Below are positions 186-63,215 of a DNA stretch of 64,000 nt, in pieces (within the stretch, counting starts at the first letter, position 1; each line of letters opens with the position of its first letter). The translations under genes were made by a program, and so were the position numbers. The notes under the pieces are model-generated. The model saw only the letters and a program-made list of their open reading frames with translations, did no database searches and was not told the origin of the DNA. Origin of the DNA: Epiperipatus broadwayi (taxonomy: Eukaryota; Animalia; Onychophora); NCBI GenBank assembly GCA_028023455.1, contig JAQFVV010000001.1:124001-188000 (forward strand), written 5' to 3'.

Positions 186-227
186 GCTCCAGGCCAGTTT
201 CTAGCTATTGGCTTTCCTCAGTGAGAC
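186..227 (-). ncRNA. Diverged family A-type hammerhead relic (U16.1 changed to C)
   Basis: GUCUCA-CUGAGGA-AAGC-CAAUA-GCUA-GAAA-CUGG-CC-UGGAGC; stem II shows a G-C to A-U change relative to family A. Confidence 0.55.
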
Positions 228-439
228 ATTAGGATATTTCAGTCATGTTTTATGAAATATCTAATGCTTAAAATAAAATACTCTCAAGTTAAAGCTTTAA
301 AAAATATATAATAATAATAATTAGCCTAATAAAAATGATTAATAATAATTTATGTATATATTTAAATATGATTTTTTTTAACTAGTGCTTGCTAAAAAAA
401 TTGCATGTGTTTTTTAAATTCATGCAGTTTACAATATAG

Positions 440-1140
440 ACTCCAATGTGCTGCTGCTGTGACAGAGTTTTTCATCAAAGCAAGTAGTTGCTGCAACTAA
501 GTTAATTGGTGAATAGAGCTGCTATTTTATCTAATTAATGTACTATATGGAAGTGAGACTTATGCATCCTACTGATGCATTATAAAGATATTAAGAATGT
601 TTTATTGAAGGATGCTCTGTAAAATTTTAAACATACAATAATAAGTTTGAAAAAGCTAATCAAATTGTTCTTCAATTTGCTGGATGTGATACTATAGAAT
701 CCATTATTGTAAAATCACCCCTTTATTGGATTGGACACATGAAACAAATTACCAATGCAATATTTCCTAAAAGTGGTGTTTAATAGTAAACTTGATCGTG
801 ATTTTCATGGGAGAGGTAGACCCCTCTGTGTTATAAAGATTATCTCAAAAATATTTTAAAGAAATGGAATATTGATTGTTTTCATTGAGAAGATGTGGAA
901 GAGGATAAAATATATTGGAGAGCTGTAGAAAGAAAAGTTTTCTGCTTAAGAAATTAAAAGACGTCATCACAAAATATCAAACAAATAGAAAAATGGACCA
1001 GCATGTTTTCTACATAGATGTATGTATGTCTCACGAATTGGTTTGTGTAGTCATTGCAAAATCCATTTCTAGAGTAGTTTCTTTTCTTTACTTAGAGTTG
1101 GAATGGCTGTACTTGTTTCTGAGTGATTACTGCATGTATG
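440..1140 (+). mobile_element. Decayed non-LTR retrotransposon 3' end (RTE/L2-like); a second copy lies at 15960-16660
   Basis: WIGH..., GRPxxxYKD and RIGLCSH-like remnants. Clear nucleotide similarity between 720-1140 and 16250-16660. Confidence 0.6.
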
Positions 1141-1692
1141 TATTTATATCAAATGAATACAGTCCAATAGGGTGTGATGATTGTAGTTTTAGGAGGCTTA
1201 ATATTATTGGAATCACTTGTTTTAGTTATAAATGCATATTAAGAGCTCTCAACTGTTTTTTCAATGTCTACAATTTTGTGTTTAAATGAGAGAGAATCTT
1301 TTTATTTTTCTGGAAATGTACACATATGCACATATATATTTATGTATGCAAAAATTTATAAGTAATACATATATCCTTGCATTTATATTTGCATATATAT
1401 AATTCTGGATTATATAACCAATAAATTTATTGCATAGCAATAATTATTCTGATTATACTGATCCATGTGACCAAATACGTTTATCAAATTTCATGATAAT
1501 GATAAATACATTTAAAATTTATGTGAATTATACATATATATATATAATGAATTTGAAATAATTTATTTTTATTATTTAATCTTGGCAATTTGTAATCAAA
1601 TTTCTTTTTTTTTTTAATTAGAATATTTTAATGAAGGCAAACTTTTTTAACCTATTTAAAATTATTTTGATTTTTTTTATATATATAATTAG

Positions 1693-1805: not shown

Positions 1806-4800
1806 GTGAGGTCACTGACCTTTCATAGATAAGTTGAGTAGACTCTTTTACTAAATAAAATAAAAAATTGTTTTTCTAATTCTAAATCAATTAATAAGTT
1901 ATAGTTATTGGTAAAAATCATTAGCTTTGTTTAGAAAAATATTTAATATTTTCATTATCATAATAGAAAAACAACAATTTTTAAAACAATATTATAGAGA
2001 ATAATATTTCCTCTGTCAACCACATCAATTTCAAATATATTTTATCACCATAACCATTTTTATAATATGACTTATAGGGTTGAACCAAACACTAAAAGTC
2101 TTCAAATAACTCTGTAAAATATAACCAAGATTATTAGAGTAACAACTTAATGCAGATAGCATGTTTTTTTTTCCACTTCCAGCTGTATAATAGCTACTTT
2201 AGAAAAACATATTGCACCCAAATCACTCCTTTGTCTTAGTCTATAATTTTAGAAGAAATAATTTATTTTTCTATTCCAGAGTCATTTATTATAAGCTTGA
2301 GTATTTTGTAATGCTGTGAGCACATTCTCAGACTAGTTTCTGACTATTAGTCTTCATCATTATGCAACTTTGTGTTTACACATACACACACCACAGCCAT
2401 TTCTAACTTGTTTATGCTTTTTTTAAACTTTATTTCAATCTACATCTGAGTCCACTTACATGTTCAGTTATGTACTTTTAATGCAAATTTTTTTATTGAG
2501 TAAATATATGAATATATGGTTATACTGTAAATATTACATATGAATCATCTGAATAAATCATGTAAAATTGTTTAAAGTATTTATGAGATATATAATTAAA
2601 ATGCAATGGTGAGTTACCAAGGAATAAATATTATTATATTTGAATTTTAAAAAAATTTATTTCCTAAAAAAATAGTGTAAAAAAAACTGGGGATTGTATA
2701 GTTCGAAAAATAAATTATCTGAAAATTACACCTTTATTGTTTTCACAAAGTGGAAAAAAAAAGGAAAGGGAGGGATTATTTTAAAATCAATGTAATGAAG
2801 TTACAATATAAAATCTAACTGTTAATTTCACTGATTAAAAAAAAAAGATTGTAATTGAGAAGTGGGATTAATAAAATGGTACCATATAGACCACAAAAGA
2901 AATAAGATTAAAGTTATGACCTAATATTGGGAAAGTGGTCTCTCTCTATTAATTAATACATTTAATGATGGATTGTGAGAATGCATGATTGTGATTATGA
3001 TGTTTTTAAATCTGTGTAATACATTACTGGAACAGTAAATGGGTGATTGTTTATGATATCAAGAGTTGAGAATCAAAGTGGAACTAAAATATTTTATATC
3101 CCTATACTTGATTTTGTTGACAATAAAGATAACTTTAATGTGTTAGCAAGTGGAGATTACTATATCTGTGATGAATTTGTTTGCATTAAGTGCCAGGGCA
3201 TTAAAATCTTAATTGATCTTTAAGTATGAAATACAGAAACAGAATGCAATAATAAGCATTATGTTTAGCATATTATGTGCATTTTTTTGACTGAAATGGA
3301 AATAGTTTAATGCTCCATATAATATAAAGATAATAATTTTTTTTTAAAATGACAAATCAGTGTATTTGATATTATGGTATATTATTTTAGAGAAAATGAG
3401 AATGTTTATAAATAACACTTTTGCTTAAATGCAAATATACATTTTATGCAAGAAGTTATTTGTTTTTTCAATAGATGTTAGCAATTGTTTCTAAGTGAAA
3501 TTAGATAATATGAAATAAGGAATTTAGAGAAGGTCCATAAAAATGGAGAAAAGTATTTCTCTGAATGAAATTGTCCAATGGAAGGAGTTGTCTGCTCTAA
3601 TTATCAAGGATAATGAAAAGTTTAGACAGAAGTTTTTTTTAAGATGGAAAAAAATTGATAAATCATACCTGTATGAAATATATTTAATGTTGTCCTTGAA
3701 GATTGAGATTTGTATTCCAATAGATAATGCACAATATAAATAAAAATAGAAAAAGATAATTCAGACACGATTCTTCAGCATAGAAATAAGTAGCACAAAA
3801 CAAGATATGTTTTCACCTATAGAAATGGGAACTTCCTTATTCAACATAAAGATTTATGATTAAGTAATAAAAGGAGTAAGGATTGTTATAAAATTGGATA
3901 GGTGTATGGATGGAAACTGAATCAGAATCTGGATGGCAATTCATGCAGTTTTCCTGTATTGCCTAAGGTAATTAATCATAAATTTAAATAAAATAATTGT
4001 CCATAGAATAGAGAAACCTTGTTTTATAAATTGAAATTGTGATTGATATTTGTGATAAGAATATCCATTGCATATTATCCTTAATTAGTGATTCTATGGC
4101 TTTAATAAGGAGGAGGATTGTTTAAATAAGTCTGGCCCAATTATTTTATTTATTTGGAAGATAACTCCCAAATATGTTTCTCTACAAGACAGTAACAATT
4201 TCTACATGATTTTATTTATTAATCTGTTGATATGTTTACATTAATTATTTACTTGCTTTACTATCTAAATATATTGTTTATTACTCTTAAGTTGTTTTAT
4301 GTTAAGATTATCTTCATTTGTGTTGTATAAATGCATCAAGTTTTAGATGTTTTTTCAACCATAAAGAATGTATACAAAAAGTTAATAACTCATTTAAACT
4401 TTTTCTTGAACTATCCAAAATGTTTAAGCTAATTATGAATAATTTCTTTTATATTTGCATTTTATTGGGTGGAATCCAAGTGTAAATATCTACTAATTTT
4501 ATATTGTAATGTGAAAAAAAAAATGCATAAATAGATGTAAACAAATTTAATTATATATTATAATTAGATATATTTATAATCAGTAAGGAAATTATTAATT
4601 TAGAAGACAAATTGTAGTCATCAAATTACTTAATTTGTGTGACAGATCTGAATTTAACACATAATAGCATGTAATTGATATCTTGGTTATTACATTGATA
4701 ATAAAAGTTAATATATTAAGATTTAAAACTGTAACAATTTATTTTTTTGAATGAAACTTAATCTTTTTAAATAGTTATTATTATGTTTTAGATATATATG

Positions 4801-6712
4801 GAGTAAAAAAAAAAACTCTTTTACATCTTATATTTCCCGTTTCTTTTACTATTGTGTATTTGATGTTCAGGATGTAAATAATTTTGTCTTTTCACTTTTT
4901 TTTAATCATTCAGCTTGATTTATTTAAATAACTTATATTTCACTTTGAATCTTGGTAAAAATTTCCTTATTTTCTATTTTTCAATAGTTTTGAATTGTCA
5001 TAAAATGATTTTGTTTATTATGAATGTTTTTTATTTTAATCATAAAAATTTAAAGTTCATTAATCTTACCTTTTTTTCTTTTGCTAAATACTTGTAAAAG
5101 GATGGCAATTTTAATATTTTATTTTTTTTATTTTTATATTTATGAGATAATAATGGCCATAATAAGCAAGACTACTCAAAAGCTTTTTCATTTTGTTTGA
5201 ATATCTTAATTTTATTGTTAGTTAATATCTGAAGTAAAAGAAAAAAATATCTATATATTCATTTATTATTTATATTAACTTTGTTTTGTCTTTGTTTATT
5301 TAAAATCTCTTACACTTATTTCAATAATTTCTAATATATATATATCACTTTCTCCTCTCTTTCTGTATATATGTGTGTGTGTGTCTGTCTTGATCAGCTA
5401 AAGGATATAACATCTGGTGAAGAAAACTTTCTTTGCATATAAATAAAATGTATCTGCTGTAAGTGCCACTTACTAAATAGGAATATTACTCTCTATAAAG
5501 ATTATGTTTTCCTCCCATTATTGTTTTATTTCTAGCAATTTAATACAAAACATAGACATTTATGACATGAATCATTCAGATATAATTCGCTTTAACTAAT
5601 AACGTGCTTACCATGAAAATAAGATAAGAATATCAATACAAAAGCAAAAGGAGTGTAATAGGCATTTTACCTAATAATAACCAGTTTATTAATAATAATA
5701 AAAATATCAATATTATCATATCATATGATTAAATATTGGGTTTAAATTTATTTTAATGCATTTAATTTGTTCTAAAAGTTTTTCCATGAATTCATCCAAT
5801 TTCTCAACAAAATTGTGGAAGAAATAAAATATAATAAAAATAAAATTACAAATCTATACTTAAAGTATGATAATAATAAAAACAGCATTAATTGTAATAA
5901 TATTCATGAATTTAGGCCTTTCAGAAATTGAGTAAAGTATATTTTTTTTATTTGACAATTAACTTAAAATTTGTGCACATACAATGTACATGTTCTTTAA
6001 TAGTTATATATTTAAATTCACTATCTTAAAGATTTAATTTCTTCCTTGGGTAATGGTGTCCAAAGTAGTTTAGAATATTATTTGAATTGTCAGCAAAGTT
6101 ATCCATAAAACTGATATAGTTTCTTTCTTAGATTGTAATTTTAGTGTATGTTTAATTCTCCATTTGCTTTTAGATTTACAAATTTCATAGATAGGGCTTG
6201 TTGTATTTCATTTAATTTACTTCCAGCATGACATCTTTTCATCTCCAAGGAACTATATAACATGAGGCAGCTAGAAAGATCTCTAACCAATCATCCTAAA
6301 AAACATTGTAGTTTCATTATAGGATTCCATAGCTTTGGTTGGGGAATATATTAAAAAGTTATTTTCCAGTGATAACTTATTGCCTCTTTGCTCTTCAATC
6401 AGTAATTTTATAATTATTATTGTAAGTTTTTCCTTTACTTTTTCTTTCAGCTGATGTTCAGATATGTGATTTGGCTTGTCTCAACTCTCAGTACCAGCTC
6501 ATTTAACAACTGTTCTCTAATCAACTGAAAAGTTGCCCAAAAAAATATTTTCAAAATTCACATGCTACCCACCTATGTTATCAATAAATATTTTTATTCT
6601 GTTCTCATTTGCTTAAAAACCATATGTTGATTTGTTTTCCAACAGATTTATTTATTAGTTTGATTGTTTTGGTCTTTTGAGATTTTCAACATGCAAATGA
6701 ACTCCTTGGTCT

Positions 6713-7289
6713 TTAAATAGTCAAAATAAGAGTCATAGATCACATGACCCTATCTCTTAAGCTTGTAAGTTATAAACAATGAGGATTGCCAATTCCTCTA
6801 CAAGCTTTATGATAAATGCTTAGCCAGAGCCAGCACTTAAAATATCTCTGTCAGGAACCCCCCCCAACCCCTGACCATGGTTTCGTGCTTTGGCACTCCT
6901 CAGAGAGGTGTCAGGGTAGGTTCAGACACTAGATCTAAAAATACCAACCCAAAGCCAAGCACTTATCTAAAAGTTATCTATTGAGTGGAAAATCTGAAAT
7001 TTTCAGACATCTACATGTCTTCAAACCCAGCTATCCAACTCAAGTAGCTATATGGGTCTGATAGATCTTCAGCCATACCATATAGTAGTAGTGTTAGCAA
7101 TATAAAATTGCATAAGACTTATGGCAGAGACTATAAATAGTCAAAATAAGAGTCATAGATCACATGACCCTATCTCTTAAGCTTGTAAGTTATAAACAAT
7201 GAGGATTGCCAATTCCTCTACAAGCTTTATGATAAATTCTTAGCCAGAGCCAGCACTTAAAATATCTCTGTCAGGAAACCCCCCCCCCC
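6713..7289 (-). mobile_element. Family B retrozyme-like element B1: one 420-bp monomer plus a ~157-bp terminal direct repeat
   Basis: AAATAGTCAAAATAAGAGTC recurs 420 bp apart (6715 and 7135). 13-bp TSD AACTCCTTGGTCT at 6700-6712 and 7290-7302. Contains one hammerhead. Confidence 0.88.
6867..6909 (-). ncRNA. Type I hammerhead ribozyme with intact core; predicted cleavage between 6873 and 6872
   Basis: Minus strand: ACCUCU-CUGAGGA-GUGC-CAAA-GCAC-GAAA-CCAUGG-UC/AGGGGU. Stem II is perfect, stem III is palindromic (ACCAUGGU), stem I is 6 bp. Confidence 0.9.
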
Positions 7290-7909
7290 AACTCCTTGGT
7301 CTATTTGTTTAAAAATGTATAATTACATAACCCAAACTTTGTTTAAACATAATAAATCTTTTCTTACTCCCAAACAATGCAAAACCCTCTTTTATACTCA
7401 TATTGTTACATTTTTGATCCAGTTGCATCTTTGAGCATACATTAAAAAAAAAAAAAAAGTATATAGATATTTTGAGTTTATAGTGATTGTTAATGTTTTT
7501 AAGATGGAATATTATTCAACTACGAATAGTTTTAATAGAATTAATATATAGATTATTAAAATAACTCTTGTTATCCATTAAATATATATATGGTGCACAT
7601 ATTATACATTGTTTGCATTCCTCTAAATTTTTTTATTTTATATTTTTCCTTTTAAAACTATGATACAACAGTATTAATATTTTAGTTCTATTTATTTTTT
7701 AAAATCTTGCTGATTTGTCTAACCTTTAGCTATTTGTCATAGTTTTGATACTTGAATTTCATTCTCAACAGTCACAATATTTGACTACTGTCATTCCAAT
7801 GAATGGAAATCCACTGATCAAATGTGTATATAGTTATAATTTGTATAGGTGTTTGTGTGTATATATATATGAGGGTGTATGTGTAATATATATATGTAAT
7901 CATTTTTAG

Positions 7910-15401: not shown

Positions 15402-15750
15402 ATAAACCACTAAACATCACATGATCACCATGTCTTATGAGCACATAACTGTTATTAAACAGGCAAAACTGTCCATTAGTAGTGCCACCCTGTGCCAACC
15501 AGAGTAATCAATGGATGTCAGAAGACTTGTACATAAAATCCCCATCTAGTGCCTACTCATCCAATATCCCCAGACTAGTTTCTGGCTTGTGGCCTTCATC
15601 AGTAAGGAGAAGGCCACAAGCCAGAAATCAGTCTGGGGATATTGGATGAGTAGGCACTAGATGGGGATTTTATGTACAAGTCTTCTGGCATCCATTGATT
15701 ACTCTGGTTAGCACAAGGTGGCACTACTAATGGACAGTTTTGCCTGTTTC
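15402..15750. mobile_element. Family A element A1: head-to-head inverted pair with 141-bp near-perfect arms (15457-15597 and 15609-15749)
   Basis: The arms are reverse complements. 13-bp TSD ATAATATTTTTGT at 15389-15401 and 15751-15763. Confidence 0.88.
15567..15608 (-). ncRNA. Family A type I hammerhead with intact core; predicted cut between 15573 and 15572
   Basis: UCCUUA-CUGAUGA-AGGC-CACAA-GCCA-GAAA-CUAG-UC/UGGGGA; palindromic stem III ACUAGU. Confidence 0.82.
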
Positions 15751-19562: not shown

Positions 19563-19648
19563 ATGTTTAAATATAGGTATACTTTATATCTCTGAAGTAT
19601 AATTGCATCTAAACTCCAGGGATATAAAGTATACCTATATTTAAATAT
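19563..19648. repeat. Hairpin with 35-bp near-perfect arms
   Basis: ATGTTTAAATATAGGTATACTTTATATCTCTGAAG versus CTCCAGGGATATAAAGTATACCTATATTTAAATAT. Confidence 0.8.
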
Positions 19649-20154: not shown

Positions 20155-20196
20155 TCCTCACTGACAAAGGCCACAAGCCAGAAACTAGTCTGGGGA
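20155..20196 (+). ncRNA. Family A hammerhead with G8A change (C3-A8 mismatch, probably catalytically impaired)
   Basis: UCCUCA-CUGACAA-AGGC-CACAA-GCCA-GAAA-CUAG-UC/UGGGGA; stem I extends by AUCCAA/UUGGAU beyond a GAC/UA internal loop. Confidence 0.78.
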
Positions 20197-20562: not shown

Positions 20563-20604
20563 TCCTCACTGACGAAGGTTACAAGCCTGAAACTAGTCTG
20601 GGGA
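20563..20604 (+). ncRNA. Family A type I hammerhead, fully canonical; predicted cut after 20598
   Basis: UCCUCA-CUGACGA-AGGU-UACAA-GCCU-GAAA-CUAG-UC/UGGGGA; stem II is fully paired and stem I is extended by CCAA/UUGG. Confidence 0.88.
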
Positions 20605-41292: not shown

Positions 41293-44200
41293 AGTTCATG
41301 TGCTGTTTAATGGTTTAAAAAAATATTCCTTGTATCAAAATCAATTGGTCTAATAATAGCTTTCAGAAAAGTTGAGAATTATTTTTGTTGATCTATTTCA
41401 GTATTTTTTAATTTTATTATTTTGTAACTACTTATAATCATTCGGCCATAATTATTTTAATTTGCGAATTATTCTAGTACCTGAGATTTTTATAATAATT
41501 TTGTGGCAATGCCATTTTTCTTCAGTGATGTGGGGGGGTCGTAGTTGTGATTATTATGAAAGCCTAAAATGCCAGAATAATTTGCAAAGTTAGAATAATT
41601 ATGGCCGGACGATTACGTTATGGCAGTGCTAATTCCAAAATACCCTTCTTTATATGAATCTAAAAATTACTTCAAAATACACCGTTACAGAAATTTGGGG
41701 GAAATATGTAAATAGTTTCTAATATATATTTTAATTAAATTAAAACTCGTTAATTAGGCTTAATCTAACCAAAGACACTTGATTAAATCAAAATTTATAT
41801 AAGAAGCCATTTAATATTTCTCCCCAATATCTACAGTTGCAAATTTTGAAGTTAAAATAGTAGTAGTAATAATTTTTAAAGATATAAAATTGTGTATACA
41901 AGAAGCATGAAGTAATGATTTTTAAAAAAAAGAAATTAATTTTTAAAAATAATAATAACTACATTTTATCTTTAATAAATTCTAAAGTCCATATTTTTTT
42001 GTTTTGTTTTTTAAAATTAAGATCATTTGTGAATTTATTGAATAAGTTCATGCATCATTAAAAGCAGTGCTTAAAAGTGTACAGTTTGTAAATTAGTTTA
42101 ATACATTTTCATTTGTGTTATGTAAAGAAAATATAATTAATATTTTATGGTATTGCAATGCAATTTTTTAAAATCTTTTCTGCATTATTTTGTTGGTTAG
42201 ATGAGTTCTGATGCGCTAAATATGTAGAGAAAAATTTAATGATATATGCACTTAAAAAAAAAAATGTATCAACAAATAAAATAAAGACCATAACCTCAAA
42301 TGAAGGAATAAAATTTTTAACAATTAAATCACATGCTTTTTGTGGACAACCATAAAAGCAGAATTGTATAGATAGCTGAGAAACTAAACCTAATTCAAAA
42401 AGAAATGGAAAGATACAAATGTGATAATATTAGATCAGTTGAAGTGCATTGAGAGTCTGTACAAAGTAAATGAATGTGAAATCATTTGGTCTGGATATAA
42501 TTTTAAAGCATAAAGCTGATGTGGAATTTCTACTAGATAAAAATTAAGGTGTCTTAGGATCTAAATGCAATTATATCAACAAGATTTGACCCAATTTTTT
42601 TTAAGTATTTCAATAATAAAAATATATATATTTGCATCAAATAGTGTAGAAAATAAGATAGACCAGTTCTATAGGAATCTGAAATTGGTACTTGATGCTA
42701 TATTGCATAAAACTGTAATTATTACTAAAAAATATTGGAAATAAAAAGAATAAATGGGAACATTATGCAAAAATATGGTTTTTGAAAAACAAATGTCATG
42801 AAAACTATAGTTTTTCTCTAGATATGCAATTGCAACAGGTCTTCACAAAATAAAGGTAGAGATACATGATTGGTCAACATCAGTGTACAATAAAACTGAA
42901 TTTTCCAAAAAAAAAAAAAAAGACTACAAACTCAGTAATTGAAATTTTCAAATTAAATCTTAAAAAAAAAAGAAGAAGTAATATTCAGAAGCAATACCAA
43001 AGTCAACAAAATACCAGAAGTAAAAATAGTAAAAAATATACAATTTAGGATCAAAAATATGAATATTTTAAGTAATTTCAATACTTTTCTAAATTATAAC
43101 TTTAATATGCAAAATAATTTTAATAATGTTTTAGTGAAAGAATTGAAGTTAAACCAGCAAAAAAAAAACATTTGAAAGACTTGATCACACAAGAAACATT
43201 AAAACACAAGAAATATTAAAACTGATATAAGATAAAATAATTGTAAGAAAAAGAAAATGATTCAAAAGTTTCAAAACAAAAATATTGCATAAGTTGATTA
43301 GAATATCAGGGAGATGAATGCAGGGATATAGCAAAGTTCTAAGGCAAATAAAATTCAAAGAAATAAATAAGATTTATATATACAGTATATAATGAGAGGC
43401 AAAATAGAAGACAATAAAAATGTTCCAATGAAATTGAAAAGTTATAGGAAGAATGTTTTTAGACATTATATAAAGCGGACTTTGATCATAAAATAATTCC
43501 CAATTTTTTAAAAATGCTTTCTGAGATTGGAGTTCATTTGTAATATTGAAATGAATATTTTACTGGAAGATGTACAAAAGGCAGGGAATATATGAAGTCT
43601 TTTATAGTCAGTGATAAAAATAATACAATTGTCTTTTGAGATGATTGGTTTATTTTTTAAGGTCTTCCAATTTGTTTACCCAGAATTGTATCAATAAAAA
43701 TATTGGAATCTAAAAATATACCATGATGATTCTTCCTAATAAAAACGAATACTGCAAATGTTGGAATTGAACATAGTAATAAATAAAATAATTAAATGAT
43801 TTTATTTTTCAGTAGTTCACAAGAAGTTTAATCACTGCGTAAAACCAAGCAGGGTAGTGAAGATATTTTATTGCATAGTTCTTTTAGTCAATATAGAAAA
43901 ACAGAAACAATATAAATATAAAAAATACAGAGTAATTACATTTAAGCACATGTTAATGAAAGTCCTAATGAATATCTTACATATCAGATTAAAGTTTTAA
44001 ATGAAGATAAGCATGGTATATCACCAAGATGAATTTAGAAAAGGCAAGAACAGCAGATAAAGAATATTTTCATTAAACTCTATTGCTAATGATATTGCAT
44101 TATCTTAATTTATTAACTGCAATTATATCATAAATGTATATAATGTAACATTCTTCTTTTGGCTTATGAAAAATTAAATGTAGCAGTTACATTATTTGCT

Positions 44201-45683
44201 GGTAATTTATCAATCCCTGATTCATCAATAAAATATATGTTTGTTTGTTTTTTCAACTTGGGAGAAGTTAATGAATTGAATGTGGAGTGATTGTGTCATA
44301 AGGTATAGATAAACATGTGGAATTTCTATCTGATTATGCTAATTTTTAGTTGAAACAATATAATTCGACTTTAAACTGTAGTGCAATACTACATGAGAAT
44401 AGAATATTATCTTTATATCTTGTTATCCAAATCATTAGAATTATCTACTAATTAAGATACTCAATAATTAGAAACCAAGCTGAATTAATCAAGTTATTTT
44501 ACTCACTCAAAAACAATATTTATAAATTATTAAAAGCATTTTGCTGATATGTAAATAAAATTTACGATTTCAAAATATTTAAAATGTCTCTTCCGATGAA
44601 TTTTTGTTTCAAAATTCATTTTATTTATCATTTCTAAAGGAGAAATTTTATTTCCTATTAAATTTTACCGTGACTTGTTAAAATATTTCTTTGTGGGATT
44701 GGAAGCCATCTTTCACTTTTTTTTTTTTTTTTTTTGAACATGATAGAAAATATACAGTAAGGAAAAAAAATTACTTGACTTTCATAAACTATATACTTTT
44801 TCTTTAATTTTTTTTTCATATAAAATCTGAACTTTATCTATAGTCTGAAGTGATTTTTTTTTTTCTAACTTGGCAGTTTCATTTGATATTAAACTATCTT
44901 TTAATATCTAAAATTTTAAAATTGCATTTTTTTGGTAATCTTTTGTATATTTGATTATCCTGATATCTTGAATCTTATTACCGATTAATTTTTTCTAGTA
45001 TGCTTTCTTTTTTTTATTTTGTGAATACAGTTTTTGGTAAGAATAAAGTAGGTTTTAGTCATTATTGTTTAAAAAGTCAAGATAATCATAATCTTAGTGC
45101 TCATAAAAGTATGATACTCTCTCTATCAATAGAACACTATAAAATATAGACTATTATTTTTACTGCCAGAATATTGGCACATATCAAATCAACCCAGCAA
45201 GACCTTTACTCTCCAGCTAAGAATAATTAAATACTCATATACTGACCACTATCAGATAATTAAGTGGTTAAATACAGCCACTTAGGATGAAAAAAATGTA
45301 AAACCTGTTTGTGATCTGAAAAAAAAAAGACAAAGGTAATTTGATCAGATTTCAAACCCCATGTGAATGCATTAACCATTATGCCAATAGGCTGCCACAT
45401 ACTTTTTGTTTCTAAATTATAAAAAAATTTAAAGCAGTTAGTTTTTAAAATTTATTTAATCATTTTATATGCATTAACATTATATATATTAATTTTAATA
45501 TTCTTATGGATAAAAGATAAATTCATAATATTATTTCCAGGAGCTTTCATGTAATAAAAATATAATAGATTAAATAGCTATTATAAGCTATGAAGATTGC
45601 CAATTCCTCAACAAGCTTTGTGATAAATGCTTAGCCAGAGAAAGCATTTAAAATATCTCTGTCAGGAAACCCCCCCCCCCCAA

Positions 45684-45726
45684 ACCTCTGACTATGGTTA
45701 TGTGCTTTGGCACTCCTCAGAGTGGT
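45684..45726 (-). ncRNA. Inactivated family B hammerhead (GAAA changed to AUAA)
   Basis: ACCACU-CUGAGGA-GUGC-CAAA-GCAC-AUAA-CCAUAG-UC-AGAGGU. Confidence 0.72.
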
Positions 45727-45938
45727 ACTAGAATAGGTTCAGACACTAGATCTAAAAATGCCAACCCAAAGCCAGAGACTATAAATAGTCAAAATAAAGA
45801 GTCATAGATCACATGACCCAATACTCTTAAGCTTGTAAGATATAAACAATGAAGATTGCCAATTCCTCAACAAGCTTTGTGATAAATGCTTAGCCAGAGA
45901 AAGCATTTAAAATATCTCTGTCAGGACCCTCCCCCCAA

Positions 45939-45981
45939 ACCTCTGACAATGGTTTCATGCTTTGGCACTCCTCAGAGAATG
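45939..45981 (-). ncRNA. Family B hammerhead with intact catalytic core but weakened stems; predicted cut between 45945 and 45944
   Basis: AUUCU-CUGAGGA-GUGC-CAAA-GCAU-GAAA-CCAUUG-UC/AGAGGU. Confidence 0.78.
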
Positions 45982-46472
45982 CTAGGGTAGGTTCAGACAC
46001 TAGATGTAAAAATACCAACCCAAAGCCAGCATTTATCTAAAGGTTATCTAATGAGTGAAAAATCTGAAATTTTCAGATACCTACATATCTTCAAACCCAG
46101 CTAGATATACAACTCAAATAGCTATATGGGGCTGAGAGATCTTCAGGCATAGAATATATTAGTAGTCTTAGCAATATAACATCACATAAGACTTAAAGCA
46201 GAGATTATAAATAGTAAAAATAACAGTCATAGATCACATGACTCAATACTCTTAAGGTTGTAAGATATAAACAATGAGGATTTCCAATTCCTCAACAAGA
46301 TTTGTGATAAATGCTTAGCCAGAGAAAACATTTAATATATCTCTGTCAGGAAAATAGCTATTATATTTGTATTATATGAAAGCTCCCGGAAATAATGCTA
46401 TGAATATATATATATACTTTAAATGATCAAATTTCAAAGTTAAAATTTGTCCATGATTTTGTTTTAAATTGA

Positions 46473-51120: not shown

Positions 51121-51206
51121 CAAATCCTCAAACTAGTTTCAGTTTATTGGCCTACAGCGGTAGGGAGCATTGGAGTTGTATAAACGCAGCAAGCAGCCAT
51201 CTTTAC
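51121..51206 (-). repeat. Heavily decayed family A copy (GAAACTAGT retained, CUGANGA lost)
   Basis: Minus strand AAAGATGGCTGCT...CCAATGCTCC...AGGCCAATAAACTGAAACTAGTTTGAGGA parallels the A2 monomer around 20495-20604. Confidence 0.45.
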
Positions 51207-56000: not shown

Positions 56001-58791
56001 GAAATAACATCTTATTATTAAAAATTCATTAAGATCTTATCCTTGACAAAGAAGAATGTTATTTAATCAAAATGTCAGAAATTAAAACAATATATATCAT
56101 GGAAAATAATCTGCATTTCATTTATGAATAAGTAGATAGAAGTTGTTATTGTTTTTTTTTTTTTTTACTTATTTGTAAATCAATAGATAAATCACAATTT
56201 AAAAAGCCCTTCCTACTAAGCACTCCTGAATCATCACTAATTGATTTCAGAATTGTATAGATTAAAATAAATAGCCATTTATTAGTAAGAATAATAAGCT
56301 ATTTCCTGCTTCTCCAAATAATTTTTATAATTGCCAATAACATTTAAGTTTTTATTTTTGTACATGTTAGAACAAATAGTATATTTTTTTCATTTTAATA
56401 TACTTTAATGAGGATATTTAAGGTCTGTGATTATCTTTAATAGTCAAATGCTATAATAAATTTTGTTAAGGGGATAGCAAGGAATGGCAAACTAATATTG
56501 ATGATTACCAAGAAGCATTTGTTAATTTAACCTCCCTTTGAGGAAAGAACTGGACATATGCACAAACATTATTTACTCATTTATAAATACTATGTATTAA
56601 TTTATAAATAGATTAATAATTAGAGAATCATCAAGATTGTGTGAATGGTATTAAATTATCTATAATTTGGTCTCCATAAACATTTACACACACACCCTCA
56701 ACCCAAATACCCCATAAGCACTTCATTGAATCTTTTTTTTTTTTTTTAATAAAATAAGCTTATATTAGAGTTTGAATAGTGTATATTTATTATAAATATG
56801 ATCTTTAGATAAAATAAAATGTTTAATTGAGATGGAACTCTGAAAAAACTATTTAGTCATTTTTCTCAGTTATTGTATTTTTTTAATGATAAGTAATTAG
56901 TTCATAAGATATACTTATAATGTGTAAAGAATTTTAGGTTTAGGTTTATAAATCTCTTAAAAAGATTATTTTTATTACTAAGTAATAAAGTTAAAAAATA
57001 ATAAAAATATTCTAATTTTTTTAATGTTTACTTTGAGATTTTTAAATTTGGTGGTTACTAATTAATTATATGATTATTTTTAAAAATTAAATGATAAAAA
57101 GTTATTAATATTTCAGAACAATTTAAAAAAGGAAAGTCTATTATTAATATGATTTAATTTTACATTTTATAAATTAACAAAAAGATTTATTTTCAACTTA
57201 TTTTTTCTTTATTCTAGAAAACCCATAAAAAAGTCTTAAAATTATTTCTTAGATTTTGTAAACATATCAGTCATAAAACCATAAAAATTCTTTTCTCAAG
57301 TGCTGACTGGCATTCTTCTTTCTATAGATGGCAAAGAAGATTATTTAGCCTGTCCTGGTTTTAAAATCAAAGTATCTATATACATTTCTTGCCAGAAGGC
57401 AGTTTAGAGCTGGTATAATTGATATTTTACTTTCACCTTGTCTTGATTGGTTAAAATGCATTTAAAAAAACTACAACTTTCTTATACATTTTTATTATTT
57501 TCTAAAATATTCCATTTTTGCTGGTAAGCTAACAATTTATCAACTTTGTTATTCTCCAAAATGATTAAATGTTTATTATTATTGCATGTCATTAGAACTG
57601 TTGTATTTAATAAAATTTCATTCAACAACAAAATAAATGAGGTCGCCAGAATTTACTTAAATTATTGCAATCTGATAAAAATGCATAGCTTAATTAAAAA
57701 CAGTCAATTAATTAAAAATGATTGCAAATTTATTGAGATGTAAAAAAGAACTATAGTGAGCCAGTTGCCATTTTGGCCTTTATATTTATAAATAAATGTT
57801 TGATATACATTCAAGAAATTTAAAGATTTCATCTCTATAATTATTTTATTTTAAAATGTTATATAAAGTAATAAAAGAATTTAATGAAAAGCCATCTATA
57901 AAAAACTATAAATTATTTCTTTGTTCAAAATTAGTCACTTCATTTAATATAATTAATTTAATGGTAAATTTTTAAAAAAAAAAAGAATTACCCATAAAAA
58001 CGAGCAACATTAAAAATAGCAACTATTTTTATTTGATTAAAATTTTTACATTTGCAATATTGTAAGATTGCTTAAGAGAATTAGTGCCTTCCTTATTGTT
58101 AAAATTAATGTTAGAGTCTATTTCTGTTAATAATCCTTTATGAATGAGTGTATAATTTATTAGTGACTGAAAGTCACATAGTTTAAGAATATAGGTGTAT
58201 GTAATTAATATGTCTGTGCAGAAAGTTGTGGATGTTTGAGCAAATTTGATTGTACTGAATAGATGATGAGCAAATGTATCTGACCAACTATAATAACCAA
58301 TACAGAATCCTTTTTTGTTTTTTGGGAAAAAGATTCCGAAAAAAAAAAAAAGTCAGAACATTGGAATAAGTGTGTTTATAGTTAAACCATACAATTATTA
58401 TCAAAGAATTTTGACAATGATTGTATTCTTAATAAATCAATTAAAAGGAAATAGATAATATTTTCTGTTTTTTATACTAACAAAATATATATAGAATTTT
58501 ATAAGCAATTAAGAAATTTAAAAGCAGAAATTTAATGATGACAAGAAAACAGGTGAATAATTGGTTGATTAAAATTGCCAAGTGCTAATCATAGTTACTT
58601 TAAGTCTCCCTTGTTTTCTTTTTGTTGTTGTTGTTGTTTATGTATTGCAATGAATATATGAACCTGAAAATAATATCATAATTTTATAAAAATCAGTGGA
58701 TGACATTTTTTTGTGCATCAGTGATGGAATTTCAAATGGTTAAAGAAAGAAATGATCAGGTTTAATAATTGATTTTAATGATATAGTCATT

Positions 58792-59002
58792 AAACCACTA
58801 AACATCACATGATCACTATCTCATACAAGCACATAATTGTTATTAAACAATTCAAAACAAAGCAAAACTCTCCATATAAGGCTCCTCACAAGCCAGAAAC
58901 TAGTCTGGGGATATTGGATGAGTAGGCACTAGATAGGGATTTTATGCACAAGCCTTCTGGCATCCATTGATTGCTCTTGTTAGCACAAGATGGCACTACT
59001 AT
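58792..59002 (+). mobile_element. Family A element A4: inverted tail arm plus a sense copy whose CUGACGA core has been deleted
   Basis: GCTCCTCA joins directly to CAAGCCAGAAACTAGTCTGGGGA (~13 bp missing); the family tail runs to GATGGCACTAC. Confidence 0.82.
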
Positions 59003-59719
59003 TATTTTATTTATATTTAGATAGAATCAGCTCTGTAATATTAAAATGGAAAGTTAAAAGTCTGACGAGATACATGGAAAAATAGTTTATGATTTACAAT
59101 GTTTTTCTTTTTAGATTTCACCTAGAAAACTTAATTATTAATGGTGTATTAATGGTGTCAATACATGTGAAACTTTTTTAACATAAAAATGACTTTTTTT
59201 ATTATTTTTTAATTAAATTGGGTATTATTTGAGTTTCCAGATAATATTTTTCTTATATTGTTGCAAAAAATAGTATGATGTATAATTTTTTTTTTAATTT
59301 ACAAAAATTATTTGAAATATTTCTTGAATAAAAAGTTAATGTATGAATAAAATAAATCAAACTAAAAAAAAATCATTTTGATTTGAAAATTATTTAATTT
59401 CTGAATGCATGCACTATTATCTATCTTCTAACCACCTTAGAATTAAGTTTGATTGAAAATAATGTTTTTTAAAAAATATATAAGTACAACAAATAAAAAC
59501 TGAGTACAAAAAAATAAATTGTTTAGGGAATATTTTTAATTAATTAAAATTAACAACATCTCTGAATTGTTTAAAAGTTATATTGATTTTTTTAGATAAT
59601 ACTTTTAAAATTCCAGACTAATTTGGTCTCTAAAGAATCCATTAACGACATATATATATATAAAATGTCCATTAATTAAAAAAATATTGTAATAACAATA
59701 ATAAATATAATGATAATAA

Positions 59720-62440
59720 AACTATTATGTATAGTCTTTCATTCCTGAAGAAGTACTTTCAGTTAATTCCTTAATCTGCCTCAACTGCCATTAAGTTAAA
59801 AAAAAAAAGGAAGCAAATGTCATCAACTCAAATCCCACGAATCCCGAATTTTAATGTTAGCAACTTGTCTATTAATTAACTTCATTTTATTCCTATTTAT
59901 TAATATAGCCTCTTTAATTTTTTTTTTATTATGGTTTCTCTCTTTATGAAAAATTTAACACTTTTAATATCAAACTTAAATTTATATTTACATGTCCTTT
60001 CATGATTAAAAAAAAAACTGAAGCAGTCATTACAATTATTTTTACTTTTCACATGCTTATATTAACAATTCATGCTCCTTGAATTTTTTTTCAGTACTGC
60101 GCCTTGATTCACCTATATATGATAACATACATTAAAGCATTGGATCATCAAGGTATAGATCCAGGATATTGTCATATTTTAAAGAATATTTATAAAAATG
60201 CAACAGCAACAATTAGATTATATAATGATACTAGGAAAGTCAACATTGAGAAGGGTATAAAAGAGGGTAACTCCATATCTCCAAAACTTTTTACAGCAGT
60301 GCTGCAAGAAGTATTTTGTGTATTAAAATGGGAATCTAAAGGAGTGAAAGTAAATGGAGATTATTTAAGTCATTTAGATTTTGCAGATGATGTAGTTGTT
60401 TTTGCAAATAATGCTTTAGAGCTGCAGGAAATGTTGCAGGAGTTATCAGATGAAAGTTGGAAAGTAGGTCTAAAGATAAATATTAAAAAGTCTAAAGTAA
60501 TGTTTAATGGATTTTCTCAAAATATGAAAATAAAGATTGATTATGATGAGTAAGAAGAAGTTAACAGCTACAAATATCTTGGTCAGATTATTAATGCAGA
60601 TGAAAACATAATGGATAAAATTAATCATAGAATTAAACTTGGTTGGAGTGCTTTTGGTAGAAATAACTTGATACTAAAAGAAAATATGCCTATGTGTTTG
60701 AAAAGAAAGGTTTTTAATAAATGTGTTTTACCAGTTCTTTCTTATGGATCTGAGACTTGGGCACTTAATAGAAGAGCGATACAGAGACTTCTGACCACTC
60801 AAAGAAGTATGGAGAGATGCATGTTAGGAGTAACAAGAAGAGATCGAAAATGCAATATATGGATAAGAGAAACTATTGACCTCATTGAAAAAATTAAAAC
60901 ACTGAAGTGGAGTTGGGCTGGACATATTGCTAGAAGACATGATAATAGATGGACAATTGAAATCTTAAACTGGATTCCAGGAGATTTAAAAGACCCAGAA
61001 AGAGACCACATGTGAGATAGATGGATGAAATAAGAAAGTGTGCAGGGGTGATGTGGATAAGAGAAACTGAAGATCAGAGATGGTTTGAACTTGGAGAGAC
61101 CTTCTTTCTGCAGTGGATTGATAATGGTTGGTGATGATGATGATGACATCCACAAAAAATTTGATACACAATATTACTTTTCTGCTTGACAGATATGACA
61201 TTTTTAGAAGTATTCATTAATTTATTAACATTATTTGTAACACAAAATGAAATATTAAACACATTCTTATATATATCCTTAAAAAGTTTCACTTGAGCAT
61301 TTTAAACAAATGGAATAGATATCCATTTTTTACTATCAATCTTCAACTCCTTTAAACCATTATATCTTCTTTTAAATAGACATAAACTATTGTTAATCTG
61401 TTCCATCTTATAACTAACTTTAAGCAATTCCTTGACAAATATCTCAACATTTTTTAATTTATCGCACTGATAATAATGTAATTTTTCATTATGAAAAAAA
61501 AAAAGATCTAAAACTTGCCATTTTATGCATAATTGGTACTTTTGATTTACAATTTATATATCCCCTTTTTTTGCAATGGTTTGATTATTAATTTATAACT
61601 TAACATCCTATTATCTCTTATAATAATTAAATCCAAATACTTAATATTTTTGTCCTGTTCATTTTCAATAGTCCATTTCAAGCCTTCTCTACAAGCAAAT
61701 TTATAGTATTGGTATATCCACACACAAAAACATCATCCACATACCTTTTGTAAATTTTAATATCTTTAAAAGAACACATATTTAAAATACTACTCTCATA
61801 TATAGACAAAACAAAATTTCAAACTTGTGCAACAACAGGCAGACCCATAAGCCAACCTTGAGACATTTTATAATATCCACTTTCAAAAGAAGCAACAAAG
61901 TTATCATCAAACAATTTTAAAGAATTAATAAAATTTTATCTTATATTTACAAATACCTTTACTTTTTAATGCATGTTCAATATGGAATCCAGTCTATCAA
62001 TCAAACTATACATTTCTGTTATATCTAATGAAGTAATAACCTTCTTATTAATCATTATATTTTTAATTCTAGCTACAAAATCAAAAGGTGACCCAATAAT
62101 ATTTTCCCTAGTCCTAAAAACTCTTGTAATAGCTTACCAATATATTTAGAAGTCTGATACATAAATGAACCACCAATATCAATCATAATTCGCAAAGGAT
62201 TGCCTTCCTTATGTAACTTTATATTTGCAAAAAATATGAGGACATACCAGCACAGGAAGGATAAATCTTATATTATACATTATTACTTATGTCTTTATTT
62301 TTAACATTTTTTAAAATATTGTTAATAATTTTTTTCTCTGACTATCCATATTATATTCTTCATGCACTTTAACTTTCTCAGTATACTGACATTTCATCAT
62401 TAAACATATCCACAGCCCTTTATCTCTTTCAAACAAATCA
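59720..62440 (-). mobile_element. Penelope-like element relic (RT, GIY-YIG, terminal HHR-like motif at 59747-59788), split by an RTE insertion
   Basis: KLHKEGNPLRIMI, ITSLDITEMY, GLPMG, RYVDDVF and KQKSNIVYQIFCGC motifs. The EN sequence resumes at 60132. Confidence 0.85.
60133..61145 (+). mobile_element. 5'-truncated RTE-clade LINE: RT C-terminal half, one in-frame stop at 60551-60553, (TGA)5 tail
   Basis: GIKEGNSISPKLF, LDFADD, YKYLGQ and KWSWAGHIARR motifs. Tail at 61132-61146. 4-bp ACAT duplication at 60129-60132 and 61146-61149. Confidence 0.92.
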
Positions 62441-62519
62441 TATTATTCTTCAGCCTCTATTTAAATTCCAAAATGGCCAATTCCCATGACTTATCATATG
62501 GAATCACATTCAATTTATT

Positions 62520-63215
62520 CACTTAATTTTTTTGATAATTTCATCAACAATATGAAGTTGGTTATAAGATTGAACCAATTAACAATACTTTATATCAATT
62601 TTAGAAAAAGTTATAATGGGTTAAAGGAGTTGAAGATTGATAGTAGAAAATGTTTTATCTATTCCATTTGTTTCAAATCCTCAAGTGAAATTTTTTAAGG
62701 ATTTATAGAAGAATGTGTTTAATGTTTCATTTTGTGTTACAAATAATGTTAATAAATTAGTGAATAATTCTAAAAATGCAATACCTGACAAGCAGAAAAG
62801 TAATATTGTGTACCAAATTTTTTGTGGATGTATGTTATCAAATATAGGTGAATCGAGATGTAGCATTGAAAAGAGATTAAAGGAGCATGAATTGTTATAT
62901 AAGCATATGAAAAGTAAAAATAATAGTGATTTAATCACTGTCAGTTTTCTTAGATCATGAAAGGATATTGAAAATGTTAAGATTCTTTATGAAGAGAAAA
63001 ACCATAAAAAAAGAAAAATTAAGGAGGCTATTTTAATAAATAGGAATAAAATGAAGTTAATTAATAGACAAGTTGCTATCATTAAAATTTGGGATTCATA
63101 GAATTTTAGTTGATGACATTTGCTTCCATTTTGTTTTTTGAACTTAATGGCAGTTGAGGCAGGTTAAGGAATTAATAAAAAGTACTTCTGCAAATTGAAA
63201 GAGTATATAATAGTT
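62520..63215 (+). mobile_element. Inverted partial copy of the same PLE (EN plus terminal HHR-like motif at 63150-63191)
   Basis: Reverse complement of 59720-60132 joined to 61150-61470; track ORF 62715-62960 reads KQKSNIVYQIFCGC..IGESRCSIEKRLKEH. Confidence 0.85.

What the first reader, a model, noticed from the sequence alone, without database searches (positions are those of the whole stretch)
186..63191. A community of hammerhead-ribozyme retroelements: two non-coding ~410-425 nt retrozyme-like families alongside Penelope-like helpers
Seen: more than a dozen motifs of the form stem I-CUGANGA-stem II-GAAA-palindrome-UH-stem I, on both strands. Family A (15402, 20028, 41126, 58792; relics at 186 and 51121) and family B (6713, 21691, 45586) share no obvious sequence. 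They converge on the same design: a ~410-425 nt monomer, one HHR per monomer, many internal hairpins, partial tandem arrays, 13-14 bp TSDs, and a 6-bp proximal stem I followed by a 3-nt bulge and further pairing. At least six PLE relics (RT and/or GIY-YIG) lie in the same window, several ending in HHR motifs. Established: minimal type I HHRs with palindromic stem III occur in PLE terminal repeats and in metazoan retrozymes (Schistosoma Sm-alpha, newt satellite 2, cricket pDo500). Such HHRs cleave as dimers, and retrozymes can yield circular RNAs. Inference: A and B are non-autonomous, circRNA-forming retrozymes mobilised by PLE RT/EN. The class is known; these families may not be.
Basis: partly seen in the sequence, partly recalled or inferred. 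Interest (0 to 1): 0.92.

Follow-up and report, generated by a model that had tools for sequence, protein, structure and literature searches.

The report
Hammerhead retrozymes inserted Penelope-style
This stretch of an AT-rich animal genome is littered with short non-coding mobile elements that carry a self-cutting "hammerhead" RNA motif and were pasted in with the footprint typical of Penelope-like retrotransposons; this is a clear example of a known kind of element, not a new kind.

Summary
The observation largely holds. The window contains 13 hammerhead (HHR) motifs, 5 of them with an intact core. A strict descriptor finds 4, against 0.01 expected by chance. Families A (408-454 nt) and B (422-434 nt) are real and high-copy, with at least 5,700 and 2,600 candidate loci. 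Both form tandem arrays.

Corrections:
- A and B are homologous (z=7 against random genomic segments), not convergent.
- A third HHR family (C, about 417 nt) lies at 19598-20014.
- The RT at 60101-61128 is an RTE-type LINE, not a PLE. Only 3 solid and 2 weak PLE relics were found.
- Rfam's Hammerhead_1 model detects only the B-type motif.

Both families have two alternative 3' termini, 57-59 nt apart. Head-to-head composites always carry one terminus of each type (17 of 17). In 14 of 17 the whole composite is flanked by a 10-15 bp TSD. This matches the published PLE footprint: 5' truncation, partial tandems, an adjacent inverted copy and a one-sided tail. Young intact PLEs (817-aa ORF) with their own minimal HHR are present in the genome.

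Self-cleavage and circular RNA remain untested, because no run on record as RNA held the element. Other reports of this scan reached the same reading on other stretches of this genome.

The parts
6711..7296 (-). Family B, 1.4 monomers. It runs from monomer position 1 (about the HHR cleavage site, 7296) through the HHR at 6867-6909 to the long-type 3' terminus T2 at about 6711-6714. Flanked by a 13-bp TSD, AGACCAAGGAGTT.
   Evidence: Rfam Hammerhead_1 scores 34.3 bits at 6867-6909.
21694..22220 (+). Older family B copy (81-87% identity). A short inverted piece at 21694-21759(-) is joined to a + strand array at 21746-22220. The HHR core has decayed (CTAAGGA, AAAA) at about 21990-22030. The hairpin at 21690-21815 is the inversion junction.
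45581..46353 (-). Family B array of about 1.8 monomers with an internal deletion. It ends at the short-type terminus T1 (45584). The HHR at 45939-45981 has a broken helix III (CCATTG) and a G-U pair at 10.1/11.1.
15403..15749 (-). Family A head-to-head composite. The sense arm at 15403-15609(-) carries an intact HHR at 15567-15608 and ends at T2 (15403). The inverted arm at 15610-15749 ends at T1. The 13-bp TSD on the + strand is ATAATATTTTTGT.
20025..20714 (+). Family A head-to-head composite. A short arm at 20026-20140(-) ends at T2. A 1.4-monomer + strand array at 20143-20713 ends at T1. Its HHRs are 408 nt apart: 20153-20195 has G8 changed to A, and 20563-20604 is intact. The 14-bp TSD is GTTGTATGAGATAG.
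41125..41320 (-). Family A head-to-head composite. The arm at 41125-41274(-) carries an intact HHR at 41232-41273. A short + arm at 41283-41320 ends at T2.
58790..58986 (+). Family A head-to-head composite. An arm at 58790-58858(-) ends at T2. In the + arm at 58888-58986 the HHR core is deleted at the junction.
19598..20014 (+). It has a sharp 5' start at about 19598 and a 3' end at about 20014. Its HHR at 19928-19973 has a 6-bp helix II. A small inverted 5' piece lies at 19561-19597. The genome holds at least 5,800 candidate loci.
40..230 (-). Old relic of the A/B superfamily (69% to B positions 19-159). Its decayed HHR at 186-227 has U16.1 changed to C. Helix II reads AGC/GCU, a compensatory change relative to GGC/GCC in A.
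2325..2366 (-). Decayed A-type HHR relic (C3 changed to A). Helix II reads GAC/GUC, a second compensatory variant.
51132..51173 (-). Strongly decayed A-type HHR relic.
28560..30952 (-). Largest PLE relic. RT plus GIY-YIG lie at 28878-30952 (58% identical to the genome's intact 817-aa PLE). The 3' non-coding region has tRNA-like A/B boxes and a decayed PLE-type HHR at 28684-28732 (G12 changed to A).
25905..26222 (-). PLE GIY-YIG endonuclease relic.
62712..63098 (+). PLE GIY-YIG relic. Its inverted partner copy lies at about 59698-60132, and a weak RT relic at 61113-62237(-).
60101..61128 (+). Not a PLE. This is the 3' half of an RTE-type APE LINE (83% to an intact 985-aa copy with Exo_endo_phos plus RVT_1). 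A second LINE relic lies at 9455-10368(-).

Best explanation
Families A, B and C are non-coding, non-autonomous short retroelements of the animal 'non-LTR retrozyme' / Penelope-associated type. A and B are diverged members of one superfamily.

Each monomer of about 410-450 nt carries one minimal type I hammerhead motif. The motif has a full catalytic core, a 6-bp helix I that continues into a long closing helix, a 3-4 bp helix II, and a loop-less palindromic helix III (ACUAGU or ACCAUGGU). The palindromic helix III implies pairing of two motifs.

Shown here: the copies were inserted by target-primed reverse transcription with the Penelope footprint. That footprint consists of 10-15 bp TSDs, variable 5' ends, head-to-tail partial multimers, an adjacent inverted arm, and a 57-59 nt tail present at only one end. 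The two alternative termini, T1 and T2, lie about 107-128 and 162-166 nt downstream of the cleavage site.

Inferred: transcripts are cut by the paired hammerheads to unit length and possibly ligated to circles. The RT/GIY-YIG endonuclease of the genome's active PLEs then copies them in trans, priming from both nicked DNA strands.
For: The HHR motifs exceed chance, and one passes the Rfam score.

Compensatory changes between related lineages:
- Helix I positions 2.1/1.1 are A-U in A and U-A in B. Positions 2.6/1.6 are U-A in A and A-U in B.
- Helix II reads GGC/GCC (A), UGC/GCA (B), AGC/GCU (relic at 186) and GAC/GUC (relic at 2325).
- In contigs of three other organisms, position 2.1 of the B-type HHR is changed. 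Position 1.1 is changed to match in all of the few contigs that reach it in two of them, and in about half in the third. Only the HHR and the ~200 nt upstream of it are conserved there.

The sampled copies point to a source with an intact core: 36 of 51 A copies and 15 of 22 B copies are still intact.

Footprints:
- T1 and T2 termini occur in both families.
- All 17 composites carry one terminus of each type, and 14 of 17 have 10-15 bp TSDs against 6 or less in controls.
- Junction positions are variable.
- Arrays reach at least 13 units.

The published PLE hallmarks are the same (PMC8557442).

Young PLEs are present: many 817-aa open frames, 2,847-bp tandem units, their own minimal HHR, and head-to-head 3'-end pairs.

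The monomers fold better than shuffles, and the two ends are brought together in a closing helix.
Against: There is no RNA evidence at all. No run on record as RNA held the element, and only contigs could be laid.

The A/B tails show no significant similarity to the 3' regions of the two young PLE families examined (z=2.4 and 0.7). The helper is therefore not identified.

The Rfam type I model misses the A- and C-type motifs. Family A has an A.A mismatch at 10.1/11.1 in place of the usual G-C.

Individual copies decay in the core as fast as in the flanks. In the small sample, 5' ends of insertions do not cluster at the cleavage site. Hence there is no genomic trace of cleaved templates apart from copy 6711-7296.
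Confidence: 0.8

Rival explanations
1. Family A is a DNA transposon derivative (a MITE or foldback element) bounded by inverted repeats. On this view the hammerhead-like motif at the hairpin tip is incidental.
For: Copy 15403-15749 and many genomic copies are near-perfect palindromes of about 310 nt, with 93% arm identity. They match the query on both strands.
Against: The palindrome centre differs in 8 of 8 aligned copies. In an unbiased sample the junctions lie anywhere in the monomer. The two outer ends are not inverted repeats of each other, because one arm is 57 nt longer. The same family forms head-to-tail multimers and 5'-truncated simple copies. The 10-15 bp TSDs are longer than I know, from general knowledge, for cut-and-paste superfamilies. 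Family B has the same termini but is mostly unidirectional.
Confidence: 0.03
2. A and B are SINE-like passengers of the very abundant RTE-type LINE (at least 190,000 candidate loci) rather than of PLEs.
For: The LINE is young and by far the most abundant RT in the genome, and intact 985-aa copies exist. LINE relics lie in the window. No PLE 3' similarity was found either.
Against: A and B show no similarity to the LINE 3' UTR. The literature describes inverted adjacent arms and a one-sided tail as PLE-specific and not seen in LINE TPRT (PMC8557442). The elements also share the minimal HHR design with the PLE non-coding region.
Confidence: 0.07
3. The arrays are ordinary satellite DNA expanded by unequal crossing-over. 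The hammerhead is an inherited but now functionless relic, and there is no ongoing RNA cycle.
For: Long homogeneous arrays exist, for example at least 13 units on C13491 and 8 units in L010. Cores decay neutrally in individual copies. No RNA data are available.
Against: Thousands of dispersed short copies have TSDs and defined 3' termini. B copies are 94-98% identical, which indicates recent spread. Compensatory changes between lineages and conservation of the HHR half across species argue for past selection on the fold.
Confidence: 0.1

Closest known systems
Metazoan non-LTR retrozymes (Cervera and de la Pena, NAR 2020, PMC7229834)
   Same: Non-coding tandem repeats of 150-450 bp, each with one type I HHR. 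GC content below 45%. TSDs longer than 4 bp. High copy number. Highly self-paired monomer. Co-occurrence with PLEs.
   Different: That paper defines retrozymes by canonical HHRs with loop 1-loop 2 contacts and assigns the minimal variants to PLEs. Here the HHRs are of the minimal, loop-less helix III type. Circular RNA expression is not shown here. Most family A copies are twin-armed dispersed insertions rather than long arrays.
Minimal HHRs in the pseudo-LTRs of Penelope-like elements, and the PLE insertion footprint (Craig et al., MBE 2021, PMC8557442)
   Same: Minimal HHR with a very short palindromic helix III. Also 5' truncation, partial tandems, an adjacent inverted 5'-truncated copy, and a tail extension at only one end. 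The genome's own 817-aa PLE shows the same layout.
   Different: A, B and C have no ORF and no detectable sequence similarity to the PLE non-coding regions examined. The tail is 57-59 nt, against the published 30-40 bp.
Non-LTR retrozymes as non-autonomous PLE derivatives in vertebrates (Li, Clavereau and Pollet, bioRxiv 2026, 10.64898/2026.07.22.740005)
   Same: The same hypothesis: retrozymes depend on and derive from PLEs, and the two co-occur.
   Different: Their evidence is co-distribution and pLTR sequence homology in Xenopus. Here homology to a PLE was not found, and the link rests on insertion architecture. The host is an invertebrate-like AT-rich genome whose PLE and LINE proteins are nearest to insect ones.
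Schistosoma Sm-alpha, newt satellite 2 and cave-cricket pDo500 hammerhead repeats
   Same: Short repeats of 330-500 nt with type I HHRs whose weak helix III requires two motifs to pair (recalled knowledge; the newt case is cited in PMC7229834).
   Different: No sequence relationship was tested.
Non-autonomous Chlamys PLE derivatives such as MRC1 (PMC8557442)
   Same: Non-coding elements that make pLTRs and multicopy head-to-tail insertions using PLE machinery.
   Different: They share 3' ends with their autonomous partners and lack HHRs. A and B carry HHRs and show no shared 3' end.

Membership tests
Hammerhead ribozyme, type I (Rfam RF00163) | Conserved core CUGANGA ... GAAA ... UH with helices I, II and III, and helix I open | tested here: met
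   Five motifs carry the complete core and three helices. The descriptor gives 4-6 hits against 0.01-0.03 expected.
Hammerhead ribozyme, type I (Rfam RF00163) | Score at or above the Rfam gathering threshold (34 bits) | tested here: inconclusive
   The B motif at 6867-6909 scores 34.3 bits, but only with lax filters, and there are no hits in gathering mode. The A- and C-type motifs are not reported even at E<=10.
Hammerhead ribozyme, type I (Rfam RF00163) | Helices supported by compensatory substitutions | tested here: met
   Pairs 2.1/1.1 and 2.6/1.6 are swapped between A and B. Four different Watson-Crick versions of helix II occur in A, B and two relics. A change at 2.1 in other species, matched at 1.1 in the few contigs that reach it, points the same way. 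The count was made by hand, because the MAFFT alignment A1 misplaces B by one column.
Hammerhead ribozyme, type I (Rfam RF00163) | Site-specific self-cleavage | not testable with these tools
   No raw RNA reads were available.
Metazoan non-LTR retrozyme | Tandem non-coding repeats of 150-450 bp, one HHR each, low GC, TSD longer than 4 bp | tested here: met
   A monomers are 408-454 nt and B monomers 422-434 nt. GC is 0.39-0.41. Arrays range from 1.4 to at least 13 units. TSDs are 10-15 bp.
Metazoan non-LTR retrozyme | Canonical HHR with stable helix III and loop 1-loop 2 tertiary contacts (PMC7229834) | tested here: not met
   Helix III is a 4-6 nt palindrome without a loop, and helix I is a continuous stem. 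The motifs are of the minimal, PLE type.
Metazoan non-LTR retrozyme | Expressed as unit-length linear and circular RNA | not testable with these tools
   No listed run is on record as RNA, and contigs only were available.
PLE-mobilised non-autonomous element | 5' truncation, partial head-to-tail tandems, adjacent inverted 5'-truncated copy | tested here: met
   All four A copies in the window, and at least 13 of 29 unbiased A loci, are head-to-head composites.
PLE-mobilised non-autonomous element | Tail extension present at only one end of the insertion | tested here: met
   Termini T1 and T2 lie 57-59 nt apart. All 17 composites carry one of each type and none is homotypic. The published description is in PMC8557442.
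PLE-mobilised non-autonomous element | Sequence shared with an autonomous PLE (pLTR or 3' end) | tested here: not met
   No significant similarity to the 817-aa or 809-aa PLE families.
PLE-mobilised non-autonomous element | Potentially active autonomous PLE in the same genome | tested here: met
   Many uninterrupted 817-aa RT plus GIY-YIG frames occur in 2,847-bp tandem units with their own HHR.
MITE / foldback DNA transposon | Terminal inverted repeats at both ends and a fixed internal structure | tested here: not met
   The ends differ (T1 against T2), the junctions differ in every copy, and unit number is variable.
LINE-dependent SINE | 3' tail shared with a LINE, or an A-rich / simple-repeat tail | tested here: not met
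   No similarity to the RTE LINE 3' UTR. The termini end in ...TTTA with no A tail.

The most novel reading that the evidence does not exclude
The elements may be modular. The HHR plus the ~240 nt upstream of it is conserved across at least four organisms. The ~185 nt downstream of the cleavage site, which holds the T1/T2 priming sites, is lineage-specific. It may be exchanged to match the local PLE reverse transcriptase. The strict one-T1-one-T2 rule would then reflect a two-site entry of a dimeric PLE RT/EN on one (possibly circular) template. That would make these abundant short elements a natural read-out of the still unknown Penelope integration mechanism.
Probability: 0.2. Interest if true: 0.55.

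Novelty: new member of a known kind. Interest (0 to 1): 0.35.

Why it matters
This adds an invertebrate-type genome in which hammerhead 'retrozymes' can be tied to Penelope-like machinery by their insertion footprint rather than by sequence homology. The footprint consists of twin arms, a one-sided 57-59 nt tail and 10-15 bp TSDs. It shows that two apparently unrelated families are one diverging lineage that keeps the ribozyme fold through compensatory changes. It also warns that the Rfam Hammerhead_1 model missed four of the five intact-core motifs in this window. The thousands of young copies could serve to dissect how PLE endonuclease and RT resolve integration. The kind of element and the hypothesis are already published, and this scan has reported the same reading elsewhere in this genome.

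Tried and rejected
1. Rfam at gathering threshold gave no hit. Rfam on a 751-nt sub-window gave no hammerhead hit for the A or C types.

2. Variant cores (A3-U8, U3-A8, G3-C8), noted elsewhere in this genome, are absent from this window.

3. RNA evidence was sought, but no listed run is on record as RNA. The four runs laid were contigs. They showed only cross-species conservation and no molecule ends.

4. I looked for a helper by sequence. A/B against the 817/809-aa PLE non-coding regions, and against the LINE 3' UTR, gave nothing significant. The 18-nt match TTAATAACAGTTATGTGC reached z=2.4, with 8 of 300 shuffles as good.

5. Core conservation against flanks in individual copies is uniform at 80-99%.

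6. An inversion-junction hot spot at the HHR appeared in 8 of 8 palindromic copies. It is an ascertainment effect of the palindromic query, because the unbiased set has junctions all over the monomer.

7. 5' ends at the cleavage site: only copy 6711-7296 and perhaps L011 show this. There is no enrichment.

8. RNAcofold of isolated motifs favours dimers by 5-8 kcal/mol but does not return the double-hammerhead fold, so it is not decisive.

9. ARAGORN finds no tRNA in the window or in the PLE locus.

11. The organism could not be named. The PLE and LINE proteins are 48-60% identical to unnamed metagenome-derived proteins (top hits). The nearest named relatives, at 42-55%, are insect proteins.

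Full report
SETTING. The window is C1:124001-188000 of a 5.6-Gb, 18,588-contig assembly. Its GC content is 26%. It holds few ORFs. The retroelement proteins of this genome are 48-60% identical to unnamed metagenome-derived proteins. Their nearest named relatives, at 42-55%, are insect PLE and RTE proteins. The species could not be named.

ARE THE HAMMERHEADS REAL? Rfam at gathering threshold reports nothing. With laxer filters, one Hammerhead_1 hit appears at 6867-6909(-), scoring 34.3 bits against a threshold of 34.

- The loose pattern CTGANGA-N(6-30)-GAAA occurs 15 times against 2.5 expected.
- A full descriptor requires a 6-nt helix I, the core, helix II closure, GAAA, a palindromic helix III, UH and the return strand of helix I. 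It finds 4 sites against 0.01 in simulated sequence. A looser version finds 6 hits (5 distinct motifs) against 0.03.
- Intact motifs lie at 6867 (family B), at 15567, 20563 and 41232 (family A), and at 19928 (a third type).
- Eight further copies are visibly the same motifs with disabling changes.
- The count of 'more than a dozen' therefore holds only with relics included.
- Swapped-core variants reported elsewhere in this genome are not present here.

THE FAMILIES. In the genome, the full family A monomer has at least 5,723 candidate loci at 79-95% identity. Family B has at least 2,632 at 94-98% identity, with arrays of at least 13 units.

Unit lengths are 408-454 nt for A and 422-434 nt for B. 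GC content is about 0.40 against 0.26 for the surroundings. Both monomers fold better than all 100 shuffles (z=-3.8 and -3.7). In B the two ends are brought together by a long closing helix that continues helix I.

A third family (C) occupies 19598-20014. It is about 417 nt long, with a sharp 5' start and at least 5,801 candidate loci. It carries the 19928 hammerhead.

A AND B ARE RELATIVES, NOT CONVERGENT. A global alignment of the two monomers scores 175.5. Shuffles give 91 +/- 11, and random genomic segments of the window give 83 +/- 13 (z=7.0). Without the hammerhead the z-score is still 5.2. Shared blocks include TCAGACCCATAT, AGATCTAG and the regions around both 3' termini. The common design is therefore inherited.

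EVIDENCE THAT THE FOLD WAS SELECTED. Individual copies decay in the core as in the flanks. This includes CpG-type G8-to-A and G12-to-A changes, as expected after insertion. The majority state nevertheless has a perfect core, and 36 of 51 A copies and 15 of 22 B copies still have one.

Between lineages the helices are kept by double changes:
- Pair 2.1/1.1 is A-U in A and U-A in B.
- Pair 2.6/1.6 is U-A in A and A-U in B.
- Helix II reads GGC/GCC (A), UGC/GCA (B), AGC/GCU (relic at 186) and GAC/GUC (relic at 2325).

Contigs of public runs from three other coded organisms match only window 6871-7110, which is the hammerhead plus about 200 nt upstream of it. They carry no listed variant inside 6873-6903. 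They have 2.1 changed, and 1.1 changed to match in all of the few contigs that reach it in two organisms and in about half in the third. The depth at 1.1 is low, and 39 variants were not shown.

Family A has an unusual A.A at 10.1/11.1. Together with the 4-nt helix III, this is probably why Rfam misses it.

HOW THE COPIES GOT THERE. Both families have two alternative 3' termini.
- In A these are T1 (...GCCTGTTT) and T2 (...GTGGTTTA).
- In B they are ...CATTGTTTA and ...GACTATTTA.
- T1 and T2 lie 57-59 nt apart and about 107-128 and 162-166 nt after the cleavage site.
- 5' ends are variable, and many copies are partial head-to-tail multimers.

Very often a second arm lies head-to-head. All four A copies in the window, and at least 13 of 29 loci found with a non-palindromic query, are such composites. 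In all 17 composites examined (15 A, 2 B) one outer end is T1 and the other T2, never two of a kind. In 14 of 17 the whole composite is flanked by a direct repeat of 10-15 bp (median 12). Shifted controls give 6 bp or less. Each composite is therefore one insertion event.

The near-perfect palindromes of family A, which look like microRNA hairpins to Rfam, are such twin-armed insertions. Their centres differ in 8 of 8 copies. In the unbiased sample the junctions lie anywhere in the monomer. This excludes a TIR-bounded MITE.

THE LIKELY HELPER. The genome holds at least 97,000 GIY-YIG candidate loci. Many are uninterrupted 817-aa RT plus GIY-YIG frames, arranged in 2,847-bp head-to-tail units. 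The roughly 393-nt non-coding part contains tRNA-like A and B boxes and a minimal hammerhead (helix III ACGU, cleavage after UU). The element has a fixed 3' terminus that lies inside the first codons of the next ORF. A sister family (809 aa, 79% identical) shows a compensatory change in helix II. PLE 3'-end fragments also occur as head-to-head pairs.

However, neither PLE non-coding region, nor the LINE 3' UTR, shows significant similarity to A or B. PLE dependence thus rests on the footprint, on co-occurrence and on the shared ribozyme design.

WHAT THE WINDOW'S 'HELPERS' REALLY ARE. With the genome's own proteins as queries, the solid PLE relics are 28878-30952(-), 25905-26222(-) and 62712-63098(+). 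The first holds RT plus endonuclease and is followed by the tRNA-like module and a decayed hammerhead at 28684-28732. Weaker relics are 61113-62237(-) and 46509-46829(+). The longest RT ORF (60104-60553, element 60101-61128) and 9455-10368 belong to an RTE-type LINE with an APE endonuclease. That LINE has at least 190,000 candidate loci and intact 985-aa copies.

MECHANISM AND STATUS OF EACH STEP.
- Shown: motif, homology, compensatory changes, termini, TSDs, twin arms, and the presence of intact PLEs.
- Inferred from the literature: palindromic helix III means cleavage by two paired motifs, unit-length RNAs may be ligated to circles (PMC7229834), and PLE RT/EN acts in trans (10.64898/2026.07.22.740005).
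- Untested: transcription, cleavage, circles, and the identity of the helper.

The fixed internal termini mean that reverse transcription starts at defined sites 107-166 nt past the cleavage site. This fits either read-through multimeric transcripts or a circular template. The data cannot tell them apart.

COMPARISON AND VERDICT. The elements work like, and are best filed with, animal non-LTR retrozymes and PLE-associated hammerhead repeats. They fail one criterion of the 2020 definition (a canonical HHR with tertiary contacts). They also fail the sequence-homology criterion used in 2026, at least for the PLEs examined. They are new members of a known kind.

Other follow-up reports of this scan on other stretches of this genome reached the same 'retrozyme inserted Penelope-style' reading. 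I reached it independently.

Noticed in passing
window 19598-20014: A third hammerhead family (about 417 nt, at least 5,800 candidate loci). It has a sharply defined 5' start and an HHR only about 40 nt from its 3' end. The family A composite at 20025-20714 inserted exactly at its 3' boundary.
   Followed up: partly
window 28780-28870(-); L069 6830-6950(-): The PLE 3' non-coding region carries tRNA-like A and B boxes (TGGCTCAGTTGG ... GGTTCGAATCC) directly upstream of its hammerhead. ARAGORN does not call a tRNA. The conserved A/B block (A)GTTCAGACCCATAT faintly resembles the B-box region.
   Followed up: partly
window 27513-28303: A tandem repeat of 2.4 units of 325 nt (79% identity) lies just 3' of the large PLE relic. 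No hammerhead motif was detected, and its nature is unknown.
   Followed up: no
window 12033-12625 and 47319-47662: Another repeat family, forming a large imperfect inverted repeat at 12053-12625, with a related copy at 47319-47662.
   Followed up: no
window 572-902 and 16095-16411; 15225-15404 and 17286-17466: Further dispersed repeats (74-80% identity) that were not classified.
   Followed up: no
L069 330-470: A 5'-truncated family A piece of about 105 nt (T2 end) with a 13-bp TSD (ATAATGTGTTTTA) sits directly at the 3' terminus of a PLE tandem array. This suggests insertion next to existing PLE ends.
   Followed up: partly
window 6871-7110 in runs X3, X6, X9: In three other coded organisms only the HHR-proximal part of family B is present, at very high contig depth. 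The 185 nt after the cleavage site, which holds the priming termini, is not conserved. This hints at exchange of the 3' module.
   Followed up: partly
G000 contig numbering: Hits fall in three contig ranges (C1-, C6197-, C12393-) of equal size (6,196 each), and some loci look duplicated (for example C7540 and C364). The assembly may hold several haplotypes or versions, so copy counts may be inflated up to threefold.
   Followed up: no
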